Of a stretch of DNA of 64,000 bases, positions 1-27,162 are shown piece by piece. The stretch covers positions 18,166,001 to 18,230,000 of the forward strand of contig OZ116710.1 in assembly GCA_964199315.1 (NCBI GenBank), written 5' to 3'. Position numbers and translations under genes: made by a program. Each line of letters begins with the position of its first letter. The first letter of the stretch is position 1. Below the pieces are notes generated by a model. The model was given only the letters and a program-made list of their open reading frames with translations, did not search any database and was not told the DNA's origin. Source of the stretch: Orbicella franksi. Taxonomy: Eukaryota.

Positions 1-117
1 GAGCTAATTTACATGTTTGGTGTATTGATTATTTCAAACTTTTATGGGCAATATTTGGATACAAACAACAATTGCCGTAGAGCGCACATCGTTCCAACTT
101 GTTTTGTCTGTCTGTAG

Positions 118-3442: not shown

Positions 3443-3470
3443 ATTAAACAAACACCTAAAGTACAGAGTA

Positions 3471-4248: not shown

Positions 4249-4483
4249 AAGGAGCTACGTCACAGTTTGAGCATCTTAAAAAGTTTAGACTAAATTTTTC
4301 AAGTTGGTCGTTTGTAAGCCGTGTTAATCTTCTTCATCCTTAACCATCCTTGTTCTCATATGGTATATTATTATCTCTTTCGTGTTTTACCATCTTAGTA
4401 AGCTGCCATTTTCAGGCTTCCTTTAATTTAGGGGTAATTTTGTACGCAGCCAAAATACTCAAAATACCGTGACTGAGCTCCTT
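4249..4483. mobile_element. MITE with AAGGAGCT...GTCAC termini (Kolobok-like type, degenerate)
   Basis: Left aaggagctacgtcacagtttgagcat versus the reverse complement of the right end, aaggagctcagtcacggtattttgagtatt. Confidence 0.55.
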
Positions 4484-4748
4484 CTAGGCACTGATCACAA
4501 ATTTAATGTTGCCCCTGATTTACGACCGAGTGTCTGAATTTTTTGAATAAATAAGGTTCTAATGTTAGCCACCCTAGTTGAGGGAGAAAACGTCTTCCAC
4601 GTCCCAATAAGTTGTTCACTCTAATGAATTTTAATTATTATTATTTTAATTTAAAAATGAAAGCTATTAAGCAGTACTTTCATTCCGCAGAAGGTGGTTG
4701 GTGAAAGTTTCGGGTTTTTCTTCCCGTTTAGAAATATTTATTTTGGGG

Positions 4749-7254
4749 TTAAAACATGTCGGTCAATTTTTTCTTGTACCACGCTCGTTGCATTTTTTCG
4801 TCTCTTTTCTGCTTTGTTTCAGTAAATTTAGCCGCCGCCTCTTCCCTCAATCGATCCTCTCGTGCCAAGGCTTCCTTATCCTTAGCTCGCAGCCACTCCT
4901 GATATTTTCTCACCGCCTCGGCCTTTCTTTCCTCGCTATGCTCGCTCTCGGCGGTTTTTTCCTTGAAAAATTCCTGGTTTTTGAACTCGCTCTTTTCTTC
5001 AAGCCACATTTGGAATGTCTTTCCAGTTAATTGTCTCCTGTTAGCCTCTCTCTCTTTAGTCATGGCGTCCTTCTTCGCTTTTCCTGCCAATATTGTTTGG
5101 TTTCTGACCAATTGCGCCTCTTTATCGGTTAGCCACATCTCAAATGTTTTCCGACGATTCGACGTTTGCGCCTGCAAAAAGCGCGCGAGCTTTTCGTTTT
5201 CATCGTCGGATGACGAGTCGTCATCGTCATCGTCGTCAGACACATCAAAGTGGTCTAACTGGTTTTTCCTGATTGTCTTCCATATGTTCCAGGGCTTGCT
5301 TTCGCGGGATTCATAGTGTGACATTAGGAAGTCTTTCATCTGGCTGCTCATTTGTCTGAAATTAGAAATATTTTTTCCTACTCAGTGCATTTCTGAAGAT
5401 ATGTTCTTCGGGAAACATATTTATTTCTATGCGTTGAGGGCCGTACTGAAAAGGTTAAGCCAAATATAAACCTCATCGAATATTTTGCTGCCAAAAAAAA
5501 AAATAAATAACACGTTCAACTGAACCCAAAAGTCAGGCAGTTTTCGTTAAGGAGAGAAAAGCTCAGGGACGAGTTACAATTGCTAGTTTAACAATGCAGA
5601 AACAGAAAGTTTCCTATTCTCTCTTGTAATTTCAAATGCACATCTGCAACTCTCTGTTGTTTGCAGACGGGCCATAGTAGGGTGCTACCTCTACTACTGC
5701 CACCGATTCAAATCCTACAGTTTTATTTTCTCTTCCTCCTTACCCTACATACCTGTTCCCATTCTCTCCCACGTGCAAGCTCATGGCCCTTCTCCTCGGT
5801 TCAGGTGAGCCCGCAGGCGAGCTGTACGTACGGATCGCCTGTGTTCTCATCAGCGGAGTAGTGGGAGACCTCGGGCGAGGTAACAAGGGAGACTTGGGAC
5901 GGGGATGCAATGGAGATCTGGGGCTGAGGATAGGACTTCCTGGCCTCTCCGGGTTGAGAAGCGATGGAACGAGTTTACGACCCAAGCGCGGAGAATTCAT
6001 AGGTGATGAGGTTGGGGTGTTCACTTTAGGTAGCTTTTCCTCAACCTGTTTGACCACCGGGATAGGTTTGCCAGTCAACGGTCTTATTTCTTCGACGCAT
6101 GTGCGCACAGAACCTGCAGAAGAAGGTCTATCATGGTTGTTTAGTGACCGGCAGGCTCTTAATGGCATGTGCAGCTTGAGCTGAGGATTGGAACCTCTAT
6201 GTAACATCCTTTGGGGTACAGCACGTGCAGGAATAGGTCCTTCGCTGAACTCTTCTTTGTTTTCCTTTCGTTGATTGACTTCTTCTCTCTCCAGTTCGTC
6301 CCTCACCTTGTACATGATGTCGTCAACTGTTGACCTCGCTGGTTTTTCTTTTGATTCATTTTGGTGAGTCATGTCTTGTTTAGATTCCTCGACTTGATCG
6401 GTCTTCGTGTCATTTGCCTGGTGTTTCTGGCCGTTAGCGCGTAACTCGTCTTCCCCAATGCCTTTAATGTCAGCCTCCAACGTTTTGCCGATGGCGGACT
6501 GGCTTTCTGAAACTTCCTGGGACTGTAGTTCCACGTACTGGTTTAGTAGTTTCACCAGATCATGTTGGTTGGTGTTTTTAGCCATATCCATAGGCGTGAC
6601 TCCCTGACGGTCAGCTCTGGATAGCAGCGACGAACCATCGTTCATGAAGATTGCCGCCGCGCAAGAGAAGTTCCCGCCTGCTACCGCGGCGTGTAGAAGC
6701 GTGCGACCGCTGCATTGCACGGTTTTTTTTACGTCAATTTTCACATCTCCGTTCAACAAGTCCTGCAACAATTCACCGTCTCCTTTTTGCGCTGCTATGA
6801 AAGCTGCGACGAAAGCTCTCTCTTCGCTCGAGATCTGATTCATCTTGATGAAAATGCGTTTGAATATCTGCCGATCATCCCGCTTCATACACCGGTCCAC
6901 GAAGCGCTGCCACCATGGGGGAATGCTGAGCTCAAACGTCATTCCTTCACCACCGTCCTCCTCACCGGCTCCCCCACGGGCGGGTTGCGCCTCGATGTCC
7001 GCCATCTTTATCTCATCATTGAGTTCAATAGCTTTGTTGTCACCTCGATTGTGTACAAGTGTAAACAAGTCTGACGGAACACCGCTATTTACCTCGACCA
7101 TCATTTTCAAATCGCGCACATTCGTCGAGCGCTTGGCTTGAAAACTTAAAGTTTCTCCTGTCGGTAGCTGAACATGGACTTGAGCGGGGACTTGATAAAC
7201 GTCACTGTGTTCTTTCGTCGATTCTGTTTTACTGCTTTGCCTCTGTTCTTCCAT
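4749..7254 (-). CDS. ANKUB1-like paralogue 1: ubiquitin-like domain + ankyrin repeats + Ser/Pro-rich IDR + C-terminal CCDC34/CCDC181/MAP9-like W-repeat helix; 2 exons, about 702 aa
   Basis: Exon 1 7254-5753 ends AAC AG|gtatgt. Exon 2 5355-4749 starts tttcag|A CAA ATG. This joins the 504-aa and 200-aa ORFs in frame at phase 2 (Arg split). UBL-like VHVQLPTGETLSF..NVRDLK..GVPSD; ankyrin-like GRTLLHAAVAGGN and GVTPMDMA. AATAAA (minus strand) lies 7 nt after the stop. Confidence 0.85.
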
Positions 7255-8277
7255 TGTCTCGATCTCCTTCCTTTGAATTTCTTTCCACGGACTTTTCTAT
7301 CCCGTCAGTTAGCTGTCTTTATCTTCCAAGTTGGTTTCGTTGATTACATATTTCTACTTGTCGATTTTAAGACTTTGCTATCTCTACACCACCGCGATCT
7401 CTGGTTGTGTTTCTAACTTGAGTGAAATGATATCTTCTTAAAAGCGTCTCCAATTACCCGACAGGTATTACAGATAATTAGAGATATTGCCCAGTCACCG
7501 AGAAACAAACGACTTTTTTCAGTCCGCGTAAGAAGACACTGTGGAAAATTTGTAGTATTCACTTGGGAAAGAGGTAATCTTATTAAGTTCTGTGTTTGCG
7601 TGTTTAACATGAGCGCTTTTAAGGAGATTGAAAACATAAAGAATAACAAATAATACACTCAAAGCCGGTAACCCCCAAGGGGCCTAAAAAATGGCTTAAT
7701 ATCTGTTTTGCTTTATGTACTTTAGTTAACGATTCGTGATATACTACGCGACCAATCAAAGAACAAGCAACCTTGTCTGAGTAACTATTGTGATGTAAAA
7801 TATGTAACTTTTATTATGTTCGCAAACAAACTTACCAATATCATTTGCGGTTTGGTCTTTTATTTTTATTCCCCCTCAGTATGTCATTTAGTTGATTGTC
7901 GGATTAAATGGAAGCATCTAATGGTTTAATATTTACATTTTCGTGTAAGGAATTTCTATCGGTCTGTCTTTCTAACCAGAGTGCTCACTGTTTAACGAAC
8001 AACTACTGTTTTGTTTTAAAAAACAAAGTGATTGTCCGTGACTAAAAAAACGCGAAGCAAACTGACGTAATTGTCAGAGCTGACAAACGGAACAAAAGAT
8101 GACGAATTTCATGGATTTAGTTGAGAAAGGGAAACCTTAACAAGCACTCAAACACATCACAGGCTTTCCCTTTACGTAGCCTGATTCCTACAAACAAAGA
8201 TACTTCTGATCATTTGCCTAGGCTCATATCTGGCAAGGAAAGACAATAACCGGTAACTGTTTTGTAAATGATATTAA

Positions 8278-8401
8278 GACTGACTGACTGTCCTACTGAC
8301 GAACTGTTTGTCTGCCTGCCTAACTGACTGCCTGACCGACTGCCTGATCGGCTGACTGACTGACTGACCGACTGACTGACCGACCGACCAGCTGACGGAC
8401 G
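8278..8401. repeat. Degenerate (CTGA/CCGA)n tetranucleotide microsatellite
   Basis: gactgactgactg...ctgactgactgactgaccgactgactgaccgaccgacc. Confidence 0.85.
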
Positions 8402-8860
8402 CTATACACTACTTTTCATTCATCCTTGCAGGTTCTTGCTCCCATTATCAGCTGCTTCAAAGCTCAATTGGCGAAGCATTGTACTTGTGCACTTAATTTG
8501 TTTTCAGGCTTTTTCTTCATTACGAGTCTAATCGTATGCAAAATTCTCCACGGTAGTGGTTATCCACGTGCCTATTTGTCGTGTAATCGGCCTGCGATCA
8601 CGTGGGTGTCCAATTTCAGGCATCCAATTACAACTGTTTTCTCATTGGATACCTACGCCATGAGCACGTCAACTTTTTGAAACTTATGGAAAATAATACT
8701 GGCTTTTTCTATTAAAAGGAGTTGAAAACACATCTTCAATCTCGAAATTCGTTATTGATGCGATTAATTCTTCTTCACTTTTCATTCTATCCACAATTCA
8801 TGTGCTGCAAAATTTCAACAGTTCCGTTATAATCCTTCCCCGGTTACGGTTATAAGCACT

Positions 8861-9107
8861 CCTGGACCGGGTTGTTCAAAGCCTGATTAAGCTAATCCAG
8901 GATTAGCGAGATTTTTTATTTCAGTTTTGTAGTTTTTCCGTGAGGTTTTCTGTTTGTATTATTTGTCCTTCAGCTTTGAGCTTGCGTAATCTCGAAACAC
9001 ACAAAACATAAGCAGTGGAAAACATTTCGACACAACAAACATTGATATTTCGGTTAAATTTTAATCCTGGGATAGCGTTAACCAGCTTTCGCACAACCCG
9101 GCCCTGG
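8861..9107. mobile_element. MITE with TIRs of about 45 bp
   Basis: cctggaccgggttgttcaaagcctgattaagctaatccaggatta versus the reverse complement of the right end, ccagggccgggttgtgcgaaagctggttaacgctatcccaggatta. Confidence 0.8.
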
Positions 9108-9507
9108 TTTCTGGTGAGTCTGTCATCTAAAGATGAATGATATATCCCGATTATAAGGGCTCGCCTCCAATTTTTCCTTGTGAACCTATTAGCGTCCTGG
9201 CAGAGAAAGGGCAAATCAAGTTTGCATGCAGAATTCAATCAAAACTTTAAACCAGGTTAGCTGTCACGCAATATATTTTTCACTCTCTACTCCACAGAGG
9301 CCTCTTTCGTACTGCCTTGACCGTGTAGGCCGGCAATTTAGAGGCTGGGGGGAGGGAATAAAGAAAACACGTAGGAAACGCTCTCATCGTCTTTCCCTGC
9401 GCGCTCTCTCATTTCCCTTTTCCCCTTCCCCTCCCCTAGGAAGCTTAAGTCCCCAGTGACCAAAACCCCTTACAAATTTGATTAATCCCAGGGTCTATAA
9501 CCGGCAT

Positions 9508-9841
9508 TATAATCCATCTAATATTTTCGCTCGCGCGCGATTGGTCTAAACGCATCACGTGACTGAATATTTCCCAGCTAAAACTGGGGAATATCCGAGT
9601 GATATTCCCCAATTTTTCATACCGCGCGTGTTGCGAAAAACATTTGAAGGATTCTAAACATAATAGCCTCCATTTGGTACGGAAATATGCTGGGATATTT
9701 GTCCTTGGACATTATGTGTTCCTCAAAACTCACAGTTTTCCTCGAGCTACGCTCTCGGAAAACGGTTCGCTTCTCGGGACAGATAATGTCCGCGGACACA
9801 TATCTAGCATATTTCTGCGCCAGATGGAGGCTATTGTTTAT
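9508..9841. repeat. Interspersed repeat containing an imperfect palindrome of about 186 bp (9656-9841)
   Basis: aaaca(t)aatagcctccatttggtacggaaatatgctgggatatttgtccttggacattatg matches the reverse complement of the right arm (aaacaatagcctccatctggcgcagaaatatgctagatatgtgtccgcggacattatc). The centre is gagctacgctctc. Small overlapping ORFs on both strands are by-products of the palindrome. Confidence 0.75.
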
Positions 9842-10804
9842 TTATACGAAAAAGTCTCATTCATATTCATCATTTTGTCTAGACACATGACGGGCGTAAA
9901 CTTTTCAGTATCAAAACCCTATAGTTTTATTCAATCAACCATAAAGCAAATATATTTGTACATGTAATAATTAGCAGCTGTAAGAGATTTCATTAAATAT
10001 ATTAATTTGTTTTCTGAAAATGCGATTGTTTACAAAGCATACTTTTAACCTATCTAACATTCTTCATCATTCTATAACTGGCTTTCAGTAGAACGCTGTA
10101 TATAAGAGTTGCAGTAATCACTCAACCAATAAATCAGTCATTTGATTTTGCTTTCTGATCTACATATCGGCCTTCGCAGTGTTTGTTAGCTACTCCGGGA
10201 ATTATCACCACTTGAGACTGACTTTGCAGTCGTGGAAAAGTTCCATTTTAGATCGGAATCCTGTATCAGAAACTAAATTGATTCACAGTTTGCGTTGGAT
10301 TGGTTGTTACGTAATATGGCGTGTGTTTGTCACGACAAGCTGACGTAACAACAAAATGTCATTGCGTTTAATTGCTCGTGCAGAAGTCGCGCAATAGAGA
10401 CCTTTAGAGCCGACGACGACTTCGAGATTTTCTGCTTGCACCTAATTAGCGCACTAGCTTTTACGTCGTTTCGCAACTCTGTCAGGTCGCCCACTGCTCG
10501 TCGGCAACACGATCACTCGCAAAACTCGATAGAACTGAGGTCAACTTACTCTGGGTAAACTCAAACTTGTCATCGGATCTAAAACTCAATGGCTGTGTTT
10601 CCTCGACCGCGTAGTACTAATAAGGAAGTCAGTGTTATCCTGTAAAAAACAAAACTTTAACACTCATTAGAATTAAAAGAGATTAACGGCTGAATAGATC
10701 ACCGGCAAACCATCCAGTGTCAGAGTATGGTATGCCTGTGATTTCAGTCTCGGTGCCAGGCCTCGCATTCCTTCATGGTAGCGATAGATTCCAGCCTCAC
10801 TCTG

Positions 10805-13800
10805 TCACTTCTTTTTGTATGTCCTGTGAAATTTTCTGGTCGCTCTCTTCCTTAGCATCTCCTCCTGCTCCAAAGCTTCTTGATCCTTCTTTTGTAGCCA
10901 TTCCTCGTACTTCTTAGCAGTCTGCAGGTGTCGCTCATGACCGACACCATCTCTATGTTGCTCGTTCCTTGCCGCTTGCGGAGACGTCGGCCTTGTCCGC
11001 TCCAAGGCTTCTTTGTTGTCAAGCCACTCGGTGAAGGTCATCCGGGAATTTCCATGAGACTGCGGACCCTTCTTTTCGTGCCACGCGACGCGCGTGTCGA
11101 CGTGCGTGCCGACACGTTTGTCCACACGCGCGTCTTTGTTGCTGAGTTCTCTGTGATTAATATTTTCTGCTTCAGTTTCTTCCTCGCTACCGTCAGGTAT
11201 GGAGCCAGACCGTCTTCTTGTTCTCCATTCGTTCCAAGGTAAGTTTTCACGGGGCTGCCCGCGCAGTTTTAATCTTGCACGAAGTTGTGGACTTATCTGA
11301 TAACTGTGAAAATTACACGAGAAAATAATGTTTTTCAGTAACGTGGTTGATGAAAGACTTTTACATGATTCTTTATGTTCAACAGCCGCTTAAAACGAAC
11401 ACACCTTACAAAAGGCTATTTTTCGCATAAAATTCGGCGGAAATTGTATACAAACAAAAACTTTAATTTAAATTTGCTCCTGATTTGCGCTTTGTTTGAA
11501 ATTTTAAAATCTTTTTTGAGTTTTGTTTTCCTTATTTTCAGATAATGGTACTCTAAATGAGACAGAAGGTAATAAAAATCAAAACAGTTTGAAAACGTCC
11601 CGACCGAAAACATACTTTATGAGAAACTAGGGCACTGACATTAACCTGGCTTTCCAGAGTTATCGCTCCTTCCTATCTTTGAGCGATAGACACAGAGGTC
11701 CTGGGAACGATATTGGCGTGACACGTGATGATCTTATGCGCCGCCCGTGTTTTGGGTTTAGAAAGTCTAACTAGTATTCGTACTTTGACCTGAATCTCCA
11801 TTTGATCATGTGATCATCATGCAATAACTCACCCCTTCTCTTCCAGGTCCTCCACTTGCACAGAACCTCTCCTCGTTCGAGTAATCGGCGGGTTTGGTGT
11901 CGGTCTGAACGTGTTGTTTGGCACACTTTTCCTTCTCTGTCTGACTGGAACACTTTTGGCGTATGGCGTGGGCTGGGGACTATATCGGTTTTCTTCTTCA
12001 CTCTGTGACCTTTTAAAAAAGAAGATAGCGGAAGTAAGACAGGGAACCCAATTCAGCTGTACTTATATAAAACATGTATTTAAGATCGTATTGAGGATTC
12101 TTAGAAGCCAACATCTACAACATATCTTGACAAGTAAGTAAATAAGGATAGTAAGCTTTATGTTTTCATCCATTTTCATTCAGTCCAGACAAGTCCATTA
12201 ACATTGTTCCAGATTATGCATCTGTAGATGAAATCTTAGCCCAAATGAAAGCTATTAAGCAGTACTTTTTGTGTTTTCTGTTTTGTCTTATCAAGGTGGT
12301 TTTAAGTGTGGACAAAATCCTCGTATGGGACCATTTAAATGAAAGCTATAGCGCAGTACTTTCATGTGGTAATGTTTATTATGCTGATCAAGTTGGTTCT
12401 AACTTTTAAGTCTGTGAGGAAAACCCTTGCATGCGACCATTCAAGTGAAAGCTATTGAGCAACATTTTCATGTGGTAGTAGATATATCTGTTCATGTCTG
12501 TGGGGATAGAGGATTAATATATAGCAAATAAACTGCCATGTAGTGATGCAATATTGAGGGCAGTTTTTGCGAGGCGACAGGAATGTCTTCCAAAACTTGT
12601 TCCGGTCGAGGAGAGCAGCCATAAATCTTACCTTGGTCTGTCTGAGTACACCTCTCCAGATGACATTGAATCCTCACTGCATATTGATCCTGAACGAGAT
12701 CTGCAAACTGGAGGATGAGGAGCGATAGCTGCTGATCTCATCTCGCCATTCACAGGCCCAGAAGCGCGCACTTGATTAGCCACGTGGGCATCACGTGAAT
12801 CTGAATTCACGGAAGAACTACTGTCTTCGATTTTGATGAGTGGTAATTTTATCTCATTTTTTATCGTTTTGTCTGGTAATACGGGTAGACGCCTTCGTCG
12901 CTGGGTTTTTACCACGCGGTTGATGGGCGCGACTGTCTCTTGGAGCACGCCTTGCTCGTTGTCGCTAACGTCCGATTCGTCTCCACTCAAAGCCGACCGG
13001 TTATGTCGTTGGTTTCTCGTTGCACGGGCCTCCAGTAATGGGCCAGTATTGGAACACCTCTGTGAGGTCCTAATCGGGACCCTTTCTTGCGTTTGTACCA
13101 CTGCTGGTGAACGCCACGATGTTTCGGGTGTTTCCTTATCTTCTGAATAATGTTCTTTCATTGAAACATCGTCACTTGAGGCAACGGGTGAGAAATCATA
13201 ACAAATACTTTCCTGTCCAACAGAAATTGCACATACATCGTTTTGACTTTCCACAGGCGACTTTTCCTCTCCTTTATCCGGGCATGTGATTTCAGCGGCT
13301 TCTTCGCCAGGCTCTTCACCATCTCCCTGTTCCTTAGCAGGTGCCATTAGTCTGATAAGGTTCGGTCTCTCAGTTGCTGAACGCCTCCGTCTTTGCTCCA
13401 CGAACACCTGTTTTCTAAGAAAAGCCCTCCTTGGAATTTTAGGCGAGTGACTCGTGTCTGACTCGTCACCCGACAAGGCAGCTGCCGCAAATTCCTGGGC
13501 TTGGTCCTGCCACAGTTGCAGCACGTATCTTGCAGAAATGGGAGACTCTTCTTCTTTAAAGTGCACAGCGGTGGACTCTGTTTCCTTGGATTCCACACCT
13601 GACGATTCTTTTTCCTTAGATTCCACAGCGGCCGACCCTTTTTCCTTGATTTCCGGAGCGGTCGTTCCTTCCTCTTTAGATTCCACTGCAGTTGTCCCTT
13701 GTTCCTTAGGTTCCAAAACGGACGACTCTGGTTTGGGCTCCGCAGAGGTCGCCTCTTCGGCTTCCTCTTCACGGTTAGCTGCAAGTTCATCGAGGTTTGG

Positions 13801-15531
13801 TCTTGACGCTATTGATCGTCGTCTCCTCTGCTCCACAATAGACTTCTTCCTAAGCTGAGCTCTTCGAAGAGGTTTTGGAGAAGCTGTTGGCAAGGTAGCC
13901 TGATCTTTCTGATCTTCCACATTGGTCGCACTGACTTGTTTCTCGCGAGACTCGTTCGTGAGCCCCTCGCGAGATTGTTCGTTGTCGTGTGACTCGTTCG
14001 TGAGCACTTCGCTGTCTCGTTGCTCGCTCACAATGCCTTCGCTATTTTGTCCTTGAAGCGGAGAGCTGTTTTCAGACCTCATCGCCAAAAGCAATTCCAA
14101 ATTTGGTCGTTCCGTTGTAGACTTCTTTCTCCGACTGTCAATAATACTCTGTTTTCGGAGCTGGGCACGCCTCGGTGGTTTGGGCCAGTGGCTGGAGTCA
14201 GCATCGTCGTCTGCAGATGGGTCAGCGGACAATACTGACGCGTTTTTAACGTCCTCTGGTTCATCTGCTGCTAAATTTGACGCCTGGTTTGTTGTTGTTT
14301 CGATTGGAGGCGTTTTACCCTGTGTAAACAAACTCTCATTCCAAAGCATCTCCGTGACGTGATTCGCATCTTTTCCGGTGCTTTGATTATTACTACTGTA
14401 ATAACCTGTGTCACTCTTTTGTCCACATCCCTGTTCAAAGGAGCTTAAGCTGTTAGGATTTGCATTGATCTGTGGCTCATCAAGCTTAGATGAACTGTCT
14501 AAACTGACAGCCAACGAGTCCTGACCCTTTGTGGCGTCGTAATCCTCGATGTTTACTTTCGTGACCGAAGGAAGACTTTCACCAGAGTTATGAGTAAAAA
14601 AATCGGTCTGTGTATAATTCATTCTGATCTTCTCTCCTGGCGGTTCATCTGAGTCGAGATCCAGGTCTCCGATTTTGTTGCTAATATTTTCATCGGATTG
14701 AGAGTTGCTATCGTCCCCATCATTAGAGTCACCGTCCCCGCTAACCACATCTGAAATATTTATATTGTTTTGCTCGAGGTTGTCCCAGTAATGATTAGAA
14801 AAGCTGGAATGTTTCGCATCACGCCGGTGGAGCTCGAGATAAACGTTTAAGAACTTCACAATATCTCCGGTTTCACCGTACAGTTTTATGGCCATTTTTA
14901 CCGGCGTTTCGCCAGTATTGTCGGGTGCTTCTAACAAAGCGTTGCCCTCGTTCATAAGAATATTTGCCACGCAACTTGTACTACCACCAGAAACTGCAGC
15001 GTGAAGCAGATTTCTCCCACTCAACTTAGTTTTGCTGTGTAGGTTCATTTTCCCTCCCGCAAACGCTGCGAACATCAGATTGTGGTTTCCCTTCACTGCG
15101 CCGATGAAAGCGGCTGTGAAGCTTCGTTCCTCGCGCGAAACCTGGCTCATTTTGACGTAGATTCTCTTTCTTACTTGTTGTGTGTCTCCCTTATAACACG
15201 TGGAAACAAATTTCTGCCACCACTGTGGGACTGTTACTCTCAATGTGCAGCCGTCCGTTATGCCGAGATTTGCAACGGTGTCCTCGTTACAGAGATCTTT
15301 GTTCTGTAGTCTTATAAGCTGTAGGTCGGACGGGATGCCACAAAGGAGCTCACAGTCAATTTTAATATCCTTTATCATTGCATTGTCTCCTGCGCTTATC
15401 TTAAACGTCTCTCCTTCTGGCGTTAGAATGTCAATAGCTCTGCTTCTAAAAGCGTTCTCATCAGCTTTATTGCCTGTATCACCGTCCATAATGCTTATCT
15501 GGTCACTGCTATCCACTTTGGAACAAACCAT
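10805..15531 (-). CDS. ANKUB1-like paralogue 2: UBL + ankyrin + very long repeat-containing IDR + W-repeat C-terminus; 3 exons, about 1191 aa
   Basis: Exon 1 15531-12632 (CCA AG|gtaaga). Exon 2 12009-11833 (tttaaaag|G TCA CAG...AAG GG|gtgagt; 177 nt, phase 2-2). Exon 3 11303-10805 (tttcacag|T TAT CAG...TGA). The frame is continuous through ...LPWNEWR...MTFTEWLDNKE...KYEEWLQKKDQEAL. The UBL IDILTPEGETFKI..IKDIK..CGIPSDLQLI..DLCNEDTVANLGITDGCTLRV is clearly ubiquitin-like. Confidence 0.85.
12220..12480. repeat. Tandem repeat of about 100 bp (2.5 units; tgaaagctattgagcagtactttcatgtggt family); single partial copies at about 4657-4700 and 54090-54160
   Basis: (a/g)tgaaagctat starts at 12245, 12339 and 12445. 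Confidence 0.8.
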
Positions 15532-18138: not shown

Positions 18139-18413
18139 TAGAGCGGTTTTCATTTGAGTGTCGAGAAGTAATTGGTTTTGCATCAACTATGCTACAAGAT
18201 TGGCTTAAAAAACTCGCGCCGCGTTTTCATCTACTCAGAAGTAAAAGCAAAACCAATTGTAACTCACTCGCACGCGTTTTGCCGCGCTCTGCGTCAGCTA
18301 CATGTAATTACTTCGAGCTTTGATTGGTTCACTGGATTGTCTGTGTCCTTTGTGTTTGGTTAAAGTGATTACTCTGGTTTTAGTTTTACGACATTCAATT
18401 GAAAACTGCTCTA
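18139..18413. mobile_element. MITE, TAGAGCGGTTTTCA-terminus family (275 bp)
   Basis: TIRs tagagcggttttcatttgagtgtcg and cgacattcaattgaaaactgctcta. The interior is collinear with 63680-63952. Confidence 0.85.
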
Positions 18414-18645
18414 TATAACAAACTACGTATAACTGCATTCGTCTATCTCCGAACCAATAAGATTTTTACATGTACAACTGATTTCGAAAACGTGTTGTGT
18501 GATTAGAATAAATAAGCTAATAACCGACCAACACAATTACGGTTTTCTGGTGAATTAAGTCTACTTTCTGGGAATTCCTATGGCTTTTGATTTGTGTTCT
18601 GAACTAAGCGCTCCCTATTTACAAGCGAAAAACAGAGGCTAAGCT

Positions 18646-18800
18646 ACAATCTTGACCACAATAAAATAAGAAATAAAACCACCCCTCCCCCCCCGAATCA
18701 ATGATGAACTGGCACTAAACCCAAAGCGCGCCATTTTTCCCATCATCGAAATGTGGGAAGAGGTGGTCTTAATTTTTGATTTTAATTGTCCAGGCTGGTA
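18646..18800. repeat. Imperfect hairpin / MITE related to the 304-587 element
   Basis: ctacaatcttgaccacaataaaataagaaataaaaccacccctcc versus the reverse complement of the right arm, ctaccagcctggacaattaaaatcaaaaattaagaccacctcttcc. Confidence 0.45.
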
Positions 18801-19646
18801 GGTCGCACTTTTCTAGGTGACTTTCTCTAGAGGTCAAGCCTTATGGTTTCAATCAACGAATTTCAAAGAAGCTGTGCAAAAAAAACACACACACACACAA
18901 AACAAAGAAGTAACAATAGACCGAAAAGAAAAGTTATTGATAAGACTTAACGAAGAAAAGCTGTCTTACATTCTCATTCCATGTCCTAGCCTTAGAATGG
19001 TTGTCATAAGGCTTCTGAAATTAGTATACTAACCGATAAGTTTGGGGTTTACTTAATTTTGTGTTGATCTACGATTTCAAACAGAATTTCCAGCCGACTT
19101 TCTTGATTTATAAAGCATAGAAACAATAAAGAGAACTAAAATCAGTTCCTGTACGAAAAGGTTATGTAACAAAGTCTGGAAACCTTTAAATCCGTCTTTT
19201 TGAACGTCAAGGGTCATTTCTTGATATCAGAAAGCTTGGGTTTTTTTTTTTTTTTTTCTTTCAATTTACTTTTAGTATAGATTTTCACATTCGCGATGCC
19301 TGCGACATCACCTAAACGTACTAGGATTATTTGAAACGAAGACGAAGCCTTAAAATCGCAAAGCTAAACCAATCAAAACGCCAAGGAGACACACATGACA
19401 CCCGCAGTTGCAAGCGCGGGAAAAATCACGTGCACGTGGTTAAGTTGTGCTCTAACTGAATCTAATTGGCAAATACTATTACTTCTCTGCTCTGATTGGT
19501 AAAAGAACACTGCACGAGAGTTTTGGACCAGTCAGAGAACTAGGCTGCAGAAGCACGAACTGTTGGAAATACAGAAAAGCATCAGAAAACCACTGTTTTA
19601 CACTACTTACTAAAAGGCACGCACCTACCTACACCAACAGCAAAAG

Positions 19647-22600
19647 TTACTTTACAGTTTTAAATCTATGTTTATTTAATCCTGGGCGCGGCACTGCTCG
19701 TTCTTCCACAGGCAAGCTCTGCGTTCGGCCCACCGTCTGTTTACAGTTTTTCTTCAGCTCATCTTGTTCCTCCCACTTCTTTTTCATAAGTTCGTGTTGC
19801 TGTTTCGCCAGCTGTTCCTTCTTCTCTTCCATTAGCAAGGCGTCCCTCTCTTTCTGCATCAGCCATTTGCTGTACTCGGCCTGAGACATCCTCCTTCGGT
19901 GGTATTTCTTGTCTTGCTCGAGTTTTTGTTGGCTTTCTATATCTTTTTCCCTTTCTTTCTCCCTTTCGAGTTCTCTCTGCTTATCCTCCATCCACTCCTC
20001 GAACGATTTCCCCTTGAGTAGCTTAGCTTGTTTTTCGTTCGTCTTCGCTTCCTCCTGCGCGTTTGCGAAGAGGTTCCTCAAGTGATTAAGCTCTTTTTCG
20101 GATATCCATTGTTGAAATGACATTCTCCGCGGATTGTTCGGGTCCGGCGCAGATTCTTGGTTCATAGGCTGCAGTGATTCTTTTCTAACTGCAATCCACG
20201 CATTCCAGGGCCGGTCAAGTCGTTCTTCCTCGTCCATATCTTTGAAACAACGATGTTCTCGGAGGGAATCTGCTAGGCTTACCTCGCAAATCGATCTGAA
20301 ACACAAAAGCGGAAACAGGACTTAGCCTCTAAGGAAACTCGTGAGCTTCGTCGGCAAGCAAGTAAATGAACCACGCGTGGAAAAAAATATTCATTTTAAA
20401 ATTCAAAAGAAAAAGAAAAATTTACACAGTCTCCTCTTGTTGCCATACCTAATGAAACGTGAGGGCTTATTTCTCAGTCATAATTCAAGATCTTGTTATT
20501 TCCAAGTTGAGAGTAATGTGTATCTTTCAGGGAGCGTTTTATGAATAACATATCCACTGCAACTATTTGACTTGTATCCAGGTTTGTTGGAGGAATCATG
20601 GGATTGTAAAGGAGCAACAGAGGCATTTGTGTAAAGCAGATTACGGTGTTGTTTTGAAACTCGATCACAAAGATCTTTTGATGTCTCTGGGATGAAGTGT
20701 TTATTTCTACGCAGGACCCGCCGTGTGAGAACTTAACAACCGTGTGAACACGTTTCCAATTAGTAGACACATTTCAGGTCAAGAGATTTTCCGTAACTGA
20801 GATGGAAATCAGTGTCTAACCGCCGATGACCCCCTGAATATTTTCCTCCGTAAATGAAAACGCGTCCACAAACGTTGTTTTGAAGCGTGGAGCAGTTGAG
20901 ACGAGTGTCGAATGATTTTTTCCTGAAACAAACTGCGCCGACTGTAGGTAATTGTCGATCTACAGGTTGTTTAACAGACTGGATTGGTTAGCAAGCCCGG
21001 ATTCTATGGCAGATACCCAAATTGAAGTTTGTGGATGGAATTGGCCTCACTCAGATTAGAATTATTAATTTAGCGGTATAAGCGTATAATGTCTATAATA
21101 CACAGAGGAAATTTATGCATAAGACCGCAGTAATTAGATAAACGATCACCGTTACTAGAGATACCGAATTATATTGTTGCTCCGCCGAAAGTGTTCAACA
21201 ATAATTAAAAACTACTTTATAACCAATCACTCACAAAAAGAAAATATCAATGTAAACTAAATTAAATGGCTTACACATTTTGAAACCGGCGCTTTCACGA
21301 AGTGGACGAAGTATATAACAAGAAGTACATAACAAATTTTCTCTTTGATTAACCCCCGTATCACTGTTTAATAGCTCGCATCCGTTTCCTTATCGTTGTT
21401 GAGGCATACAGAATTCTTTGACAAATTACTGATCAATCAGTTTACATTTCCTCGGCTGTTCCGTTAGTTCGTGACGTCATTTGGCATTCATCCTTCCAGC
21501 TGAAGGTCGGTTTTTCTTCAAGGTAATTCCTTCGAGTCAAACATTCCAGAATCGTTTAATATTCTCGTGTGCTTCTGGCCGCACACGGCCAAGAAACCTG
21601 GCGAATTTTTTAAGTAACAAAATCCAGGGGCTCTGATTGAAAAACAAGTTTGATTTGAACAGAAGTGACAAGTATTCGAACTCGTAACAAACATTGCGAC
21701 GTTCTGTAAAATTGCTTCAAAACTACCGACGATATTACTATAAGATTCCGCCCTGATCGCTGTATTATTGTAGTGACATAACATTGCCAAACGATTGCTT
21801 ATCGTCAACAATTGTTGTTTGGTTGTAGATTTTCTTAAAGATGACTGAGTCTTAGTCCAGAAGTTATTAACTAAACTACGAGGAATAAAGTTTAGAGTCG
21901 TTCATTTTTCAGCGTTATCTTACAGTTTCGTCTTGACAGAATGGTTAGCAGAAATCAGCTGTTTAGATCTTGCCACTTCAAAAGACCTAAACTACTGATT
22001 ATAATTATCTCGAGGTCATGTCGTGAGAGCGTTTGCTAATCGCACTTAAATACGTTTACAATTGTAAAGCACGCTATTTAGAGAAAATTCAAATGCGTTT
22101 TCATGGGAAAACGAGAGTCTGTGACTAAAAGAAAAGTAATTTCAATTTTTACGAATTTGCGTTAAGGTTAATTTAGTAAAAACTCTGCAGAACGAAACAA
22201 TGAAAGCCAAACTGATCAGTGATAAATTTCGCTTTGTTTAACTTCAAAAGATCTTGGGCCATTAATCTTTGGCAGCCGATATATCAGGCTTTGGGTGCTA
22301 AAGAAGACATAGCTTTTAAAGCTGTGCCTAATACTTTACTTTTCAGTACAACATTGTGTATCAACGTTTGGTTTTTAAGTTCCCAAAATGGAAAATAGGC
22401 CACCACGTTTTTCTTTTGTTAGGAATGTTATTGTGCATTATTATTCTCCCATCCTACACTCGGTTATCACAAAATCTGATTAACTAACAGTTATACCATT
22501 TCAAACCGTGTCACGTTTTCAAGCACTCGACCACCTGTGTAAAGTCCTCCGGAAAGCCTTACCTAAATTTAACCTCGTTGACGGTGGCAGATCTAGATCC

Positions 22601-25600
22601 GTTTACCCAATGGCTGTTTCTCGACCTCCAACACGGGGGCAACTGATTATTAACTGCGCGCTGTTTTCAAGGTAATAAAACCGACGCATTTAAATTGCAT
22701 TCATGTGCAAGCAAACTTAATCTTTATCCACACAGAGGTATTAGCAATGGAAATTTTTAATATGTGTTATGTGGATTCAGACCTTTGGCGCCGTCATTCA
22801 ATTTTAGAGTACATATTACATGCAGTTAAAAGGCTTTGCACACAATTCTCAGTGCCGGCAGCAGTGCGGCACAATTCTCAGTTGCCGGTTCCTTTTTGAG
22901 TGCAGTGGGACGCTTTAAGCTGGATTTCTTGGGTTTCCGTGGAAAGTTTACCCTTGTTTTAACATGATTACCGCAATGCTGAGAATTAGACGCCCATTCG
23001 GTCAAAAGAAAGACTTGAAAACAAAGGACGTTGTTAAAATTCCGGAAGTTGTGGATAATTTCTTATAGAATTATGGAGACCGCACAAGAAATTACAAAGA
23101 AAAACAAAATTATTCCACTCTCGCGCCCTGATTGGCCCAGTTCCGGTTTTCATCACTACAACGGAAACAAAGCTAAGCTTGGTTATTAGTCAAATGACGT
23201 AAAAAAAAAACTCCCTGTAATTTTAAGCAGTTCGTATCTAAACTGTGAAATTAAATCACGGTTTTCGAGTTGTTTTTTCAGACGAATTCTCGAGTTCAAG
23301 TGGGTCTTTCACGCACAAGTGGCAACAAATGAATCAAGTTGACACAGCAATTATTATTGAGTGACTTTCCATGAAAGGTTGAATCCAATTTGCTTCAGTT
23401 CCAAATGTCAAAATATTGCGTAAATAGAATTTGAATGCGAGCAAAGGAAAACTACTGTGGTTCATGTTATTTTCAGCACGGTAAAGGCAACACAACTGGA
23501 AAGCATTTTTAGTATTTAGGAGTAGTGCTCTGAAGTGTAAATGATTCGGAAAAAAAAAGAAAAAAAACTTTTGACATGTAGTTTGAACAAGACGACAGCT
23601 AGAGAAAAATAACAAGGGCTTAGGGAACTATACTAGAGGTCCGTCTCTTTGACCCGCCCCCTTGGTTTTGCAAAAGCTGCAGTTTAAGAACTCCTAGAGC
23701 GCGGTAGTAGAAATTATTTCTTCACGTGCTACGAGCCGAACAAACAATATTGCAGACGATACAGCAGTATTTTGACAAATTCAACAAGGAAAACACATTG
23801 CGGGTGCGTGAATACCTCGTGGCTACTAATCTTTGCAGATTTGGATAGAATTTTAATTTGCTCGTTTAGTCGTAAGTGGAAAAGACAAAAATCATTCTCG
23901 ACAAAATCGCGCGCGACAAACAAACCCTATGCCGTGCTCGCAGAATGCTAATGAAAATTACTTGGCGTATCACATGAATTGAAAAGAACTTTTGTCTCCA
24001 CTTGAAAGAATGAACATCCCGCATAGCCAAAAAAACATAAACAATCTTTTTAATCAAATCTCCTCAAGTTGTTAAAGTTCTTTCGAGCGGAAACTAACTA
24101 GCATGTTATTGTTTTGCGATTAGTAAAAATTCACATCTCTTTAACGGGACTTTTTACACAACTTTGTCTTTTTAGTGTAACTTTGCAATGAAATGCAAAC
24201 TTCGTCGGACAAAGATAGTGGACAAAGTTCATAGACGAATGCTTTCAAAGAACATAAGAGGTAATTAAATTTCCCTGTCCAAACAAATCATCTTAAATTT
24301 TGTACACATTGCAGAAGTTACATAGAAAACACTACCTTGTGTAAAAAGACAACTCGCCGAGTTTGGTACCAGAAAATAACAACAGGAATATGATACAAAT
24401 ATTTTCCTGCCTACGTCAATACTACGTTTAATATAAGCATTAAAACGGAAAAATATTCAAACATCGACTTTGATGGGGTTTTCCAGGCGCCGGAATAACT
24501 TAAAGAGGGTCGGTAGGTCATGTGTTTTTAAGGTGATTTTGCGACATAAGAATCGTGTCAAGATCACCCGAACAAATAATCGAAACTGAGATAGCTTCGA
24601 GCAACAGAAAAACACAGAACTATCTCTAGAACTGATTTGCACAAGATTATCGTTCACCAGAACTGGACGAGATTTTGAAACAGATTACAAAATTCTTAAC
24701 TTAACATCTGTCGGTGCACGGTATTAATTAATTGATTCGAGAGAAAAAAATGAGTTACAAACACAACAAAACAATTGATGCGTGGACTAAATTACTTAGA
24801 AACCGTCTTTGTTTGTCATAAGACTGAAATTTTATTGAGTTTTTATCTACTTTGTTTCAAAATTTGTAGCTTATATCTTTGAATGAACGTAAAATCATAT
24901 CCCAACAAATTGCTTGACCCAAAACAAGTATATGTTAGAACAAGAGCCTTTAAAGACGTCATCGAGACATAATGCAGTTGACTTGCATGTAAAGATTTCA
25001 CAATTTGTGAAACTTTCTTTCAGTGTTGTTTTACGACTCGACCTTCTGTATCTTAAGCAGATCATGATCATTACGGATTACATGTAATCGCACGTTCTAT
25101 CTGTGTTGTATTTCACCCATTTTAGTTTCGCAATCGGCAATATAATCTGTAGCGCGCCCTAAGCGTGTAAACACTATAGTCTGTTTACTGCGTCAACTTT
25201 CTTTTGTTTACAAAGCGACCCTAACTTAAGAGAACTTCACGAATGCGTTGACCGCGGATTGAAGCACGCATAGGTAGAAAAAGAAAAGTCAAACGTGTTT
25301 ACGAGTTAGCGAAGCTTCGCTGTGTGAAGTTACGTAAGGTCATACTCATTCTACACGACTGATAAGTCGACTTCCTGGCATTCTGTTCAGAAATGCAAAG
25401 CTTAACTTTCCAGTTCTGGTTTGCTGTGAAGGTCAATAAAGAGAGACATGAGCCACGTATACAAACACTACCCTGATAGCCTAACATGCACATACCTTGC
25501 CTTGCTTCTTCTGAACATTATGGGAGAGTTAACCTGCGCTTTACTCTCACCATGTAGATCACCTGTGGTGATAGCTTCTCTTCTACTCCGAGGGAATCGT

Positions 25601-27162
25601 ATGCCGTTTGTCCCGCCTAGAGCCGCGAGTGGCTCAGACCCACGTCTATTTGCCAGCACTCGCGCCATTTGAGGTGAAACCGGCGAGATGCTGCCGGCAT
25701 TAAAAGCCTTCATCGAGGGCTTGAACGATCGTCGAGGACTCTGTGGAGACCCAGGCGCGCTTTTCGTGATCATTTCCTCGGGGCCAGGTGTTTCGTTCGA
25801 GGTACTCAATAGTTGCTTCGACGGGGGGGTGTTCGGATTGTTGTTAGTCCGGACAACAGCTTGTTTGAGCCTCCTCTGCTGCAAAGGTGACGCGGCTAAG
25901 CTAAGCGTGTTTCCTGGAGCATGGTTTAGGCGCGTTTGAACTTCTAAAGGAGGAAGGTGATTGTCGTTTTCGTCAACTTCTTCCTCGTCAAGGTGGATCT
26001 TCGGGTACCGAACCGTTCGCGCGCTCTTCGGCCTGCGCGGATCAACTTCCTTAAATCTCCGTTGAAGCAAGTGTTGATTGGACTGTACGTTGAGAGTTTG
26101 CGGTCTGTTTAGCCTCGGGGAAATCCTGCACGATTCGTCCGAGCTTTCCGAGGAGCATGGACTTGTTCTCTGCTCCTGCTGAGGGCTGTAGTTCCCCGCA
26201 CCAGTTTGAGATTTGACTTGATTCGGGGGTGGTTCCTTCTGAGATCTCGACTCTCCAGAAAAACTCAAGCCTTCGTCACACTCTGTGATCACTAATTCCT
26301 CGTTCTCGAGAGCAACAATTTTGGTCTCACCGGAGCTCGCACTTTTGCTAGTGTGCGGTGCTTCGAGGGCGGAAATGTTTTCTTCTTGAGCTTGTTTCTC
26401 TTCTGAGGAGTCATCTGACTCCTCTGACCTACACTCTTCGCTCAAATCGATTCCAGATTCGGTGGAATTGCGCTCATGTCGCGCACCCTTCTCATTGTAC
26501 ATGTATTTATAAAGCAATCTTTCCGCATCGTGGTGATTTAATCTGCGTGCAATATCAATCGGAGTCTCTCTATTTGTGTCAAGCATTGTTAAGATCTCCT
26601 TCGTTGGCTTGATCAAATGTTTGGCTACGAACTCCACGCAGTTTACATTCCCACTTGCCGCTGCAGCGTGGAAAAGATTTCTGCCCGCCTCGGTTGCTCC
26701 GTGGTGGTCAAACTCAATGTCTAGAGTTTGGAGTCTCTGAAGCAATTTTTCGTGGCCTCGACAGCAGGCGATGAAAAAGGCGACGAATAATCTTTCCTCT
26801 TTGCTGATCTGTTGCATAGGAAGCTTAGCTCTTATGCAAACGTTCTCGATTTCATTGTTCAAGGAAACGCAAATAAACTTGTTCCACCACACGGGTACTT
26901 GAACAACAATGACAACATCTCCGATCGTTTGGATAGTTTCTTTGAGTGGCGACCAGTCGCTCAGCTCCTGGCCTGGACTTTCTAATGCGCAGAGTTGTTG
27001 CAGATTACAAGGGATTCCAAACTGCAGCTCGCAAGTGACTTTAAGATCACGCACTGTCAAGTCGAGTTTATCGCGAACCGCAATCTTTTCCGTTGAGCCA
27101 TTTGGCAACTCGATTATAACTGCTTGGTTATCATGAGACTGCGCACCCGGGTGATTTGTCAT
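19647..27162 (-). CDS. ANKUB1-like paralogue 3: UBL + ankyrin + IDR + W-repeat C-terminus; 2 exons, about 771 aa (the 5.2-kb intron could hide further phase-2 exons)
   Basis: Exon 1 27162-25496 (GCA AG|gtatgt). Exon 2 20295-19647 (gtgtttcag|A TCG ATT). Phase 2, Arg split, as in paralogues 1 and 2. There is an in-frame stop upstream of ATG 27162. Motifs: TVRDLKVTCELQFGIPCNLQQL, VPVWWNKF, EERLFVAFFIACCRG, GRNLFHAAAASGN, RETPIDIA, RPWNAW, SFQQWISEKE, SFEEWMEDK, EYSKWLMQKE. Confidence 0.8.

What the first reader, a model, noticed from the sequence alone, without database searches (positions are those of the whole stretch)
4749..27162. Tandem triplet of UBL-ankyrin-IDR-(F/Y)xxW-helix genes: a candidate undescribed ciliary/flagellar microtubule-adaptor family
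Seen in sequence: three same-strand paralogues (about 702, 1191 and 771 aa once spliced) share one ubiquitin-like domain with no terminal di-Gly, a conserved linker (PxWW.KF...EER.F.A.F.A...G), 2-3 ankyrin repeats, a divergent disordered middle of very different lengths, and a terminal exon with PWN.W plus charged helical (F/Y)xxW-x3-K repeats. The ORF track splits them into apparently unrelated ORFs; the splice sites show they are single genes. Established knowledge (recalled): ANKUB1 has UBL + ankyrin with a similar W..F...C..G linker but two UBLs and no such tail, while CCDC34, CCDC181 and MAP9 carry W-K-rich helical repeats and act on axonemal or sperm microtubules. Inference: the fusion is an architecture I do not recognise from named proteins. 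It may tether a UBL/ankyrin (ubiquitin-proteasome or phosphatase-recruiting) head to axonemal microtubules, with the three copies specialised through their linkers.
Basis: partly seen in the sequence, partly recalled or inferred. Interest (0 to 1): 0.82.

Follow-up and report, generated by a model that had tools for sequence, protein, structure and literature searches.

The report
Coral UBL-ankyrin genes with CCDC34-like tails
Three neighbouring coral genes each fuse an ANKRD60/ANKUB1-like ubiquitin-like-plus-ankyrin head to a tail resembling the sperm-flagellum protein CCDC34; the architecture is real and unstudied, and it hints that these poorly known cilia and sperm proteins work together, but its function is still inferred.

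Summary
Three minus-strand paralogues (702, 1191 and 771 aa) have GT-AG, in-frame, same-phase introns that join a UBL+ankyrin ORF to a Trp-rich helical last exon.

- **Splicing:** polyA RNA-seq shows the 5.2-kb junction of gene 3 exactly as predicted. A JGI protein call (771 aa, on a 3.5-kb contig) matches that model at 99%. Spliced orthologue transcripts carry the junctions of genes 1 and 2.
- **Conservation:** the fused architecture also occurs in Montipora, Desmophyllum, Nematostella and Actinia proteins, all named "uncharacterized". The whole triplet is syntenic in a second anthozoan genome.
- **Head:** it folds confidently (pLDDT 90). Its best matches are ANKRD60 first and ANKUB1 second.
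- **Tail:** it matches Pfam CCDC34 (PF13904) in 14 of 21 family members. The three window copies score below the curated cut-off.
- **Function:** no expression, localisation or binding data show a ciliary or microtubule role. That reading rests on homology. CCDC34 is a sperm-flagellum infertility gene. ANKRD60 is a sperm-proteome protein and a candidate multiciliation gene.

I read these as a new domain architecture built from known families. It is moderately interesting as a possible "Rosetta-stone" link between ANKRD60/ANKUB1 and CCDC34.

The parts
5753..7254 (-). Gene 1, exon 1: start codon, UBL (about 6925-7185), linker plus ankyrin-type helical domain (about 6496-6918), then a basic Ser/Pro-rich disordered middle
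   Evidence: ORF; Pfam Ank_2 35.6 bits and weak ubiquitin; AF2 model pLDDT 90.5, pTM 0.86; donor ACAG|GTATGT
4749..5355 (-). Gene 1, last exon: PWN.W plus three (F/Y)xxWLxxK helical repeats (CCDC34-like tail) and the stop codon
   Evidence: Acceptor TTTCAG|A, in frame; PF13904 E 1.2e-6, 28.8 bits, model positions 3-133 of 169; the homologous junction is spliced in orthologue RNA contigs L007-L009
12632..15531 (-). Gene 2, exon 1: UBL-ankyrin head plus a long acidic disordered middle containing three ~35-aa basic repeats (13342-14187)
   Evidence: the repeats are also seen in orthologue P0034
11833..12009 (-). Gene 2, exon 2 (59 aa, disordered)
   Evidence: GT-AG and in frame; homologous sequence is contiguous in spliced orthologue transcripts P0230 and P0242
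10805..11303 (-). Gene 2, last exon: PWN.W plus two (F/Y)xxWLxxK repeats, then the stop codon
   Evidence: PF13904 E 3e-4; junction 'VQVEDL.E./GYQISPQ' is contiguous in P0230 and P0242
25496..27162 (-). Gene 3, exon 1: UBL-ankyrin head plus disordered middle
   Evidence: the donor is confirmed by RNA-seq
19647..20295 (-). Gene 3, last exon: PWN.W plus three (F/Y)xxW repeats, a C-terminal extension and the stop codon
   Evidence: Joint 20295<->25496 in two polyA RNA runs and one contig; P0293 (771 aa, JGI) is 99% identical over the whole spliced model; PF13904 E 0.012
20296..25495 (-). Gene 3 intron (5200 nt), no further exons detected
   Evidence: Depth is about 0-2 against 10-40 in the exons, and there are no other joints

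Best explanation
Shown: the region holds three tandem paralogous genes. Each makes one mRNA and one protein with three parts. The first part is a rigid N-terminal module, a non-conjugatable ubiquitin-like beta-grasp packed through a conserved P.WW linker onto 3-4 ankyrin-type helical hairpins. This is the same module as in vertebrate ANKRD60 and in ANKUB1 from its second UBL onward. The second part is a disordered, Ser/Pro- and charge-rich middle of very different lengths. The third part is a basic, all-helical C-terminal domain of the CCDC34 (PF13904) type, carrying PWN.W and repeated (F/Y)xxWLxxK motifs. The family is old within hexacorals: it occurs in stony corals and sea anemones, and the triplet is syntenic in a second genome. 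Inferred: the proteins act as modular adaptors. The extended CCDC34-like helices would anchor the protein on a microtubule-based structure of cilia or sperm flagella, such as the axoneme or its assembly and transport machinery. The linker would be a phospho-regulated spacer. The UBL-ankyrin head would present a protein-binding surface for a still unknown partner. The three copies would differ mainly in the linker. By gene-fusion logic, the free-standing vertebrate relatives ANKRD60/ANKUB1 and CCDC34 may act in one pathway.
For: Architecture and splicing:
- Gene models are in frame with canonical sites and the same intron phase.
- RNA-seq shows the g3 junction, and a 99%-identical full-length protein call exists.
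- Spliced orthologue transcripts cover g1 and g2.
- Fused RefSeq/GenBank proteins exist in Montipora, Nematostella, Actinia and Desmophyllum.
- The triplet is syntenic in a second assembly.

Head:
- The AF2 model has pLDDT 90.5 and pTM 0.86.
- Foldseek Swiss-Prot gives ANKRD60 at E 5e-12, TM 0.73, and ANKUB1 residues 82-326 at E 4e-9, TM 0.68.
- AFDB cluster hits named ANKRD60 align at rmsd 2.9-4.1 A.
- ESM Atlas shape matches reach TM 0.77, 0.74 and 0.73 at rmsd 2.2-2.7 A.
- ESM Atlas features place 'putative ANKRD60' first at 0.95.

Tail:
- PF13904 is hit by 14 of 21 tails, best E 5e-9, and orthologue P0053 scores 36.6 bits against the 35-bit cut-off.
- The nearest named ESM Atlas feature clusters are a CCDC34 domain cluster (0.88) and a CCDC181-like cluster (0.87).
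- The model is long helices, and the tail pI is 8.6-10.

Literature:
- CCDC34 variants cause oligoasthenoteratozoospermia with a disorganised axoneme (PMC11614169).
- CCDC181 is required for sperm flagellum biogenesis (PMC11491787).
- ANKRD60 is an uncharacterised candidate multiciliation gene (PMC8470418) and a testis-elevated protein found in the human sperm proteome (bioRxiv 10.1101/315739).
Against: - There are no data on cell type, localisation, microtubule binding or partners.
- The three window tails score below the PF13904 gathering cut-off (28.8, 20.9 and 15.8 bits against 35).
- The tail model has pTM 0.24, so no fold comparison was meaningful.
- No solved structure is related to the tail by sequence.
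- Similarity of the head to ANKRD60/ANKUB1 is structural, at about 20% identity. Profile-level sequence homology could not be tested.
- ANKRD60 and ANKUB1 themselves have no demonstrated function.
- X-box-like promoter motifs are no more frequent than chance.
- g3 is expressed in whole-colony polyA RNA, which does not discriminate between cell types.
Confidence: 0.55

Rival explanations
1. The architecture is the same, but the proteins are general cytoplasmic or cytoskeletal scaffolds, for example in neurons, cnidocytes or dividing cells, with no special link to cilia or flagella. The CCDC34-type tail would be a generic microtubule- or protein-binding helix.
For: g3 is readily detected in whole-colony polyA RNA. 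The function of the CCDC34 domain is biochemically undefined (PMC11614169). Three diverged paralogues with very different linkers suggest varied roles.
Against: Both halves have their nearest named relatives among sperm- and cilia-linked proteins (PMC11614169, PMC8470418, bioRxiv 10.1101/315739).
Confidence: 0.3
2. The tail is only a charged single alpha-helix or coiled coil whose Pfam match reflects composition. The functional core is the head, acting as a small-GTPase or ubiquitin-receptor-binding module like the SHANK SPN-ankyrin unit.
For: The window tails are below the Pfam cut-off. The tail has pTM 0.24. The best solved-structure hits for the head are SHANK3 NTD-ANK complexes with Rap1 and HRas, at E 1e-7.
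Against: Trp, Phe/Tyr and Lys positions of the repeats and the PWN.W motif are invariant or nearly so from corals to anemones, which is not a compositional effect. One orthologue passes the PF13904 cut-off. The SHANK match has TM of only 0.33, so the domain arrangement differs.
Confidence: 0.1
3. Head ORFs and tail ORFs are separate genes, and the joins are gene-model artefacts.
For: Database ORF calls list them separately. One contig (L001) keeps the g1 intron. Many runs labelled RNA hold intron words.
Against: Junction reads account for essentially all the depth at the g3 splice sites, and no internal start cluster is seen. A 99%-identical full-length protein call covers the join. Spliced orthologue transcripts exist for all three gene types, and RefSeq models agree.
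Confidence: 0.03

Closest known systems
ANKRD60 (human Q9BZ19, and invertebrate proteins so named)
   Same: One ubiquitin-like domain packed onto an ankyrin-type domain in the same rigid arrangement. It is the best structural match, at TM 0.70-0.77 and rmsd 2.2-4.1 A, and the best ESM Atlas feature match.
   Different: Human ANKRD60 is 345 aa, with only about 30 residues after the head, so it has no long disordered middle and no CCDC34-like tail. Sequence identity is about 19-22%. Some invertebrate entries are long (675 aa), but their tails could not be read here.
ANKUB1 (human A6NFN9)
   Same: A UBL-linker-ankyrin module. The match covers ANKUB1 residues 82-326 at TM 0.68-0.73.
   Different: About 80 residues of ANKUB1 precede the matched module; from recall they form a second UBL, which the coral proteins lack. 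It ranks second to ANKRD60. No CCDC34 family is among the Pfam families listed for the ANKUB1 cluster.
CCDC34 (Pfam PF13904, formerly DUF4207)
   Same: The helical C-terminal domain, with Trp-containing repeats, matches 130 of 169 model positions. 14 of 21 tails match at E<0.01, and one orthologue is above the cut-off.
   Different: The window copies are below the gathering score. From recall, vertebrate CCDC34 is a stand-alone protein of about 370 aa without a UBL-ankyrin head.
CCDC181
   Same: ESM Atlas features place a 'CCDC181-like' cluster third for the tail, at 0.87 with 183 shared features. It is a sperm-flagellum protein (PMC11491787).
   Different: This is a language-model lead only. 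There is no alignment or E-value, and no Pfam match.
SHANK SPN(UBL)-ankyrin N-terminus (PDB 5g4x, 6kyk)
   Same: The only solved structures with a ubiquitin-like domain followed by ankyrin repeats that match the head (E 1e-7).
   Different: TM is 0.33 at rmsd 13 A, so the relative placement of the domains differs. It is not the same module.

Membership tests
Pfam PF13904 CCDC34 domain | HMM score at or above the curated gathering cut-off (35 bits) | tested here: inconclusive
   The window tails score 28.8, 20.9 and 15.8 bits, all below the cut-off. The g1 orthologue P0053 scores 36.6 bits, above it. 14 of 21 family tails match at E<0.01, best 5e-9.
Pfam PF13904 CCDC34 domain | The match spans most of the domain model, not a short helix | tested here: met
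   g1 tail residues 69-193 align to model positions 3-133 of 169. g3 aligns to positions 3-130 and g2 to 44-122.
Pfam PF13904 CCDC34 domain | Role in sperm flagellum or axoneme integrity, as for human and mouse CCDC34 | not testable with these tools
   Known only from the literature (PMC11614169). No coral functional data are available.
ANKRD60/ANKUB1-type UBL-ankyrin head | A ubiquitin-like beta-grasp fixed on an ankyrin-type domain in one shared geometry | tested here: met
   The model has pLDDT 90.5 and pTM 0.86. TM by query is 0.73 to ANKRD60 and 0.68 to ANKUB1, and 0.77, 0.74 and 0.73 at rmsd 2.2-2.7 A in the ESM Atlas. SHANK, the other UBL+ANK protein, reaches only 0.33.
ANKRD60/ANKUB1-type UBL-ankyrin head | Significant sequence or profile homology to ANKRD60 or ANKUB1 families | not tested
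   No ANKRD60 or ANKUB1 sequence could be fetched with these tools. Identity in the structural alignments is 17-22%.
ANKUB1 | Two tandem ubiquitin-like domains before the ankyrin domain | tested here: not met
   The coral heads have a single UBL. The alignment to ANKUB1 starts at its residue 82.
Ubiquitin-like domain (PF00240, beta-grasp) | Beta-grasp fold or ubiquitin-family sequence match | tested here: met
   Single-sequence Pfam scores are only 14.7-14.9 bits against a 25.4-bit cut-off. However, the 3-sequence profile hits polyubiquitin at positions 23-94, and model residues 23-113 superpose on ubiquitin and ISG15 at rmsd about 2 A.
Conjugatable ubiquitin-like modifier | C-terminal di-glycine exposed for conjugation | tested here: not met
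   The last UBL strand runs directly into P.WW, with no GG, in all three copies.
Ankyrin repeats (PF12796 Ank_2) | Score at or above the gathering cut-off (27.3 bits) | tested here: met
   The three heads score 35.6, 27.8 and 29.6 bits.
MAP9 | Sequence match of the tail to a MAP9 family model | tested here: not met
   The Pfam scan at E up to 1 returned only PF13904 for the tails.

The most novel reading that the evidence does not exclude
The coral and anemone proteins are a 'Rosetta-stone' fusion. They preserve in one chain an ancient partnership between the ANKRD60/ANKUB1 head and the CCDC34 tail. In vertebrates the same two modules, now separate genes, would bind each other or act in one step of axoneme or flagellum assembly. 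That would give the function-unknown ANKRD60 and ANKUB1 a role and CCDC34 a partner relevant to male infertility.
Probability: 0.3. Interest if true: 0.7.

Novelty: new variant of a known kind. Interest (0 to 1): 0.48.

Why it matters
CCDC34 is a human male-infertility gene whose biochemical role is unknown. ANKRD60 and ANKUB1 are "dark" proteins tied to sperm and multiciliated cells only by expression and phylogenetic profile. A conserved natural fusion of the two module types in cnidarians gives a concrete, testable hypothesis that they cooperate. It also offers tractable models, such as Nematostella and coral sperm, for testing it. In addition, standard Pfam cut-offs miss the tail, so the architecture is invisible in routine annotation; the fused proteins are named only "uncharacterized".

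Tried and rejected
- **RNA word shares:** shares of RNA runs over g2 and g3 were uninformative, because the RNA-labelled runs also hold most intron words.
- **Contig L001:** it is colinear with the genome including the g1 intron, so it says nothing about splicing.
- **Protein word-index searches:** all three returned mostly unspliced ORF calls and only anthozoan relatives. No bilaterian ANKRD60, ANKUB1 or CCDC34 sequence could be retrieved. Profile-level homology to those families, and whether long invertebrate 'ANKRD60' proteins carry the tail, therefore stayed untested.
- **Exhaustive profile search:** multi-ankyrin and polyubiquitin proteins swamped the hits beyond about the first 30 family members.
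- **Tail against solved structures:** a sequence search found nothing.
- **RFX X-box scan of the promoters:** there is one imperfect site about 240-250 nt upstream of g1 and one upstream of g3. At 0.36 loose sites per kb this is not above chance, and conservation in a 90%-identical relative is uninformative.
- **SHANK-like reading of the head:** rejected as the primary reading on geometry (TM 0.33); it survives only within rival 2.
- **Literature:** no paper mentions the orthologue accessions. The only paper naming two of the three gene names, CCDC34 and ANKUB1, is a gene-expression data set.


Full report
**What is in the sequence.**
The minus strand of 4749-27162 carries three long ORFs (504, 967 and 564 aa). 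Each is followed downstream by a shorter ORF of 106-219 aa. Every donor is GT and every acceptor is a pyrimidine-rich AG. The intron that leaves the long first exon is phase 2 in all three genes.

The first ~250 residues align at 30-37% identity, with invariant P.WW..F, M.Q.S.EER.F.A.FI....G and GR.L.HAA motifs. The last exons align at 32% identity, with PWN.W and repeated (F/Y)xxW(L/I/M)xxK motifs. g1 and g3 have three repeats and g2 has two. HMMs built from heads and tails find exactly three of each in the 64-kb window, at E 1e-69 to 1e-86.

**Are head and tail one transcript?**
- **g3 (RNA-seq).** I spent the single read-laying run on the riskiest junction, the 5.2-kb intron of g3.
  - Two polyA RNA-seq runs show one and only one joint, 20295<->25496, which is GT..AG on the minus strand. 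It has 14 reads from 13 starts in one run and 9 reads from 8 starts in the other.
  - A contig of a third run carries the same joint.
  - Intron depth is about 0-2 against 10-40 in the exons. No cluster of internal starts was flagged.
- **g3 (protein call).** A JGI-derived protein (P0293, 771 aa) is 99% identical to my spliced model over all 771 residues.
- **g1.** RNA contigs from three runs of a related coral (L007-L009) read 85 residues of the end of exon 1 straight into the tail: '...AMTLSGGETRRER/KMSKEMQDF...'.
- **g2.** Transcript-derived proteins of 1209 and 1206 aa (P0230, P0242; 59% identical) run through both junctions, including the small middle exon.
- **Remaining gap.** The g1 and g2 junctions were not read in RNA of this very species.

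**How widespread is it?**
Proteins that carry both head and tail in one chain include:
- Montipora RefSeq models XP_068722104.1 and XP_068697588.1 ('uncharacterized protein DDB_G0284459-like');
- Desmophyllum KAJ7384998.1, an N-terminally truncated g3-type model;
- Nematostella XP_032235979.1 and Actinia XP_031564678.1, both 877 aa and 'uncharacterized'.

In a second anthozoan assembly (ENA ERZ25071792, contig ctg18673) the same order is conserved on one strand within about 24 kb: g3-type, then g2-type, then g1-type, each as a head ORF plus a tail ORF. In both genomes a SUEL-lectin gene lies on the opposite strand upstream of g3.

A maximum-likelihood tree of 32 heads separates a g3-type clade from a g1/g2-type clade with full support. 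The anemone proteins fall in the g1/g2-type clade (midpoint rooting only). The duplications are therefore old, not a local recent event. I found no members outside Anthozoa, but the sequence tools reached few eukaryotic proteomes, so this absence means little.

**The head.**
An AlphaFold2 model of g1 residues 1-255, built from a 32-sequence alignment, is confident (mean pLDDT 90.5, pTM 0.86). It shows a beta-grasp at about residues 24-110, then 3-4 helical hairpins to residue 253. The UBL has no C-terminal di-Gly, because its last strand runs directly into P.WW.

| Search | Best matches |
|---|---|
| Foldseek, Swiss-Prot models | ANKRD60: E 5e-12, TM 0.73, residues 71-316. ANKUB1: E 3.9e-9, TM 0.68, residues 82-326 |
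| AFDB fold clusters | Entries named ANKRD60 at rmsd 2.9-4.1 A; entries named ANKUB1 lower down |
| ESM Atlas, by shape | Two unnamed ankyrin clusters of 323 and 348 aa, mostly chordate (ANKRD60-sized): TM 0.77 and 0.74, rmsd 2.2-2.4 A. ANKUB1: TM 0.73 |
| ESM Atlas, by features | A molluscan 'putative ANKRD60' cluster first, at 0.95 |
| Solved structures | SHANK3 SPN-ankyrin: TM only 0.33, so a different domain geometry |

The nearer relative is ANKRD60, and the coral head has one UBL where ANKUB1 has about 80 more residues before the matched module (a second UBL, from recall). Sequence identity is about 20%, and I could not run a profile comparison because neither human sequence was obtainable.

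**The tail.**
- **Pfam.** The only family found is PF13904 (CCDC34, formerly DUF4207).
  - The three window copies score E 1.2e-6, 3e-4 and 0.012, all under the 35-bit cut-off. They cover up to 130 of 169 model positions.
  - Across the family, 14 of 21 tails match, with best E 5e-9. One g1 orthologue (P0053) passes the cut-off at 36.6 bits.
  - In the full-length proteins scanned the tail scores at best 17-19 bits, far under the cut-off, or is not reported at all. That explains the bland database names.
- **Language-model features.** After an unnamed oomycete-dominated cluster (0.89), the next clusters are a CCDC34-domain cluster (0.88) and a CCDC181-like cluster (0.87). Lower down come the axonemal families CFAP141 and RIB43A. 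These are leads, not tests.
- **Structure and charge.** The AF2 model is two long helices (residues 71-110 and 114-200) with no confident tertiary packing (pTM 0.24). The tails are basic, with pI 8.6-10.
- **Solved structures.** No solved structure is related by sequence.
- **Not compared.** I did not fold-search so uncertain a model, so similarity to CCDC34, CCDC181 or MAP9 models remains untested. Pfam gave no MAP9 signal.

**The middle.**
The middle is 245, 775 and 310 residues long in g1, g2 and g3. About 70% of its residues are polar, charged, Gly or Pro, with 11-12 Ser/Thr-Pro sites in each. g2 has seven R(R/K)x(S/T) sites and three ~35-aa basic repeats. A short (K/H)LPx(I/V/L) motif recurs at a comparable position in all three gene types.

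**Mechanism.**
Shown: one polypeptide links an ANKRD60/ANKUB1-type head to a CCDC34-type tail through a variable disordered linker, and this is conserved across hexacorals.

Inferred: the protein is an adaptor. Its extended basic helices would sit on a microtubule-based ciliary or flagellar structure, and its head would recruit a partner.

The inference rests on relatives:
- CCDC34 variants cause oligoasthenoteratozoospermia with disorganised axonemes (PMC11614169).
- CCDC181 is needed for flagellum biogenesis (PMC11491787).
- ANKRD60 is an uncharacterised candidate multiciliation gene (PMC8470418) and a testis-elevated protein detected in human sperm (bioRxiv 10.1101/315739).
- ANKUB1 has no functional literature.

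Nothing here measures localisation, binding or cell type. X-box-like motifs upstream of g1 and g3 are not above chance. I put about 0.55 on the cilia/flagella adaptor reading and about 0.3 on a non-ciliary scaffold. I put about 0.1 on the tail being a generic charged helix with the head doing the work. Separate head and tail genes are essentially excluded.

**Novelty.**
The sequences are in public databases as unnamed predictions. No paper mentions the orthologue accessions. The only paper that names two of CCDC34, ANKRD60 and ANKUB1 together is a gene-expression data set. This is a new combination of two known module families, not a new kind of system.

Its main value is the gene-fusion inference that ANKRD60/ANKUB1 and CCDC34 cooperate. 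That would give a partner to a human infertility gene and a role to two dark proteins. I give this about 0.3 probability.

**Earlier scan notes.**
The scan had already noted the 35-aa repeat in g2 and a lectin-like gene upstream, both on this same window. Neither note changes the reading.

Noticed in passing
window 13342-14187 (g2 exon 1): The disordered middle of g2 holds three ~35-aa basic repeats (...SxKPxRRAxLRKxxxxEQRRRxSxxERPNLxxL), each with an RRxS-type site. They are conserved in orthologue P0034. An earlier scan note (s1-210848) also flagged them.
   Followed up: partly
window about 7494 (upstream of g1) and about 27412 (upstream of g3): Imperfect RFX X-box-like motifs (GTCACCGAGAAAC and GTAACCACCGGAAAC) lie about 240-250 nt upstream of the two start codons. 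The loose pattern occurs 0.36 times per kb in the window, so this is not significant.
   Followed up: partly
window 36179-36796 (+); L010 1747-2388 (-): A SUEL-lectin domain ORF (PF02140, 41.7 bits) lies upstream of g3 on the opposite strand. The same neighbour is found in the second anthozoan assembly, so synteny extends beyond the triplet. It is near the earlier scan note s1-210881.
   Followed up: partly
g1 aa 407, g2 aa 895, g3 aa 402 (window about 6034, 12847 and 25957): A short (K/H)LPx(I/V/L) motif recurs at a comparable place in the disordered middle of all three gene types and their orthologues. It may be a linear docking motif.
   Followed up: no
P0048, P0049 (g1-type tails of other corals): The last YxxWLxxK repeat of the tail is duplicated in these orthologues (240-241 aa against about 195). 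The repeat unit is therefore evolutionarily modular.
   Followed up: no
window 10805-15531 and 19600-27200; L001: Many runs labelled RNA or metatranscriptomic hold 73-92% of sampled words, including intron words, and contig L001 retains the g1 intron. These libraries contain pre-mRNA or DNA, so word shares cannot be used to judge splicing.
   Followed up: partly
window 54986-56506 (+) and 42519-43262 (+): ORFs of 506 aa and 247 aa have no Pfam match at E<=0.001. They were not examined further.
   Followed up: no
L006 17830-18908 (-): In the second assembly, glycine-cleavage T-protein fragments (GCV_T, GCV_T_C) lie downstream of the g1-type gene on the opposite strand. I did not check whether window 1-4700 holds the same gene.
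   Followed up: no
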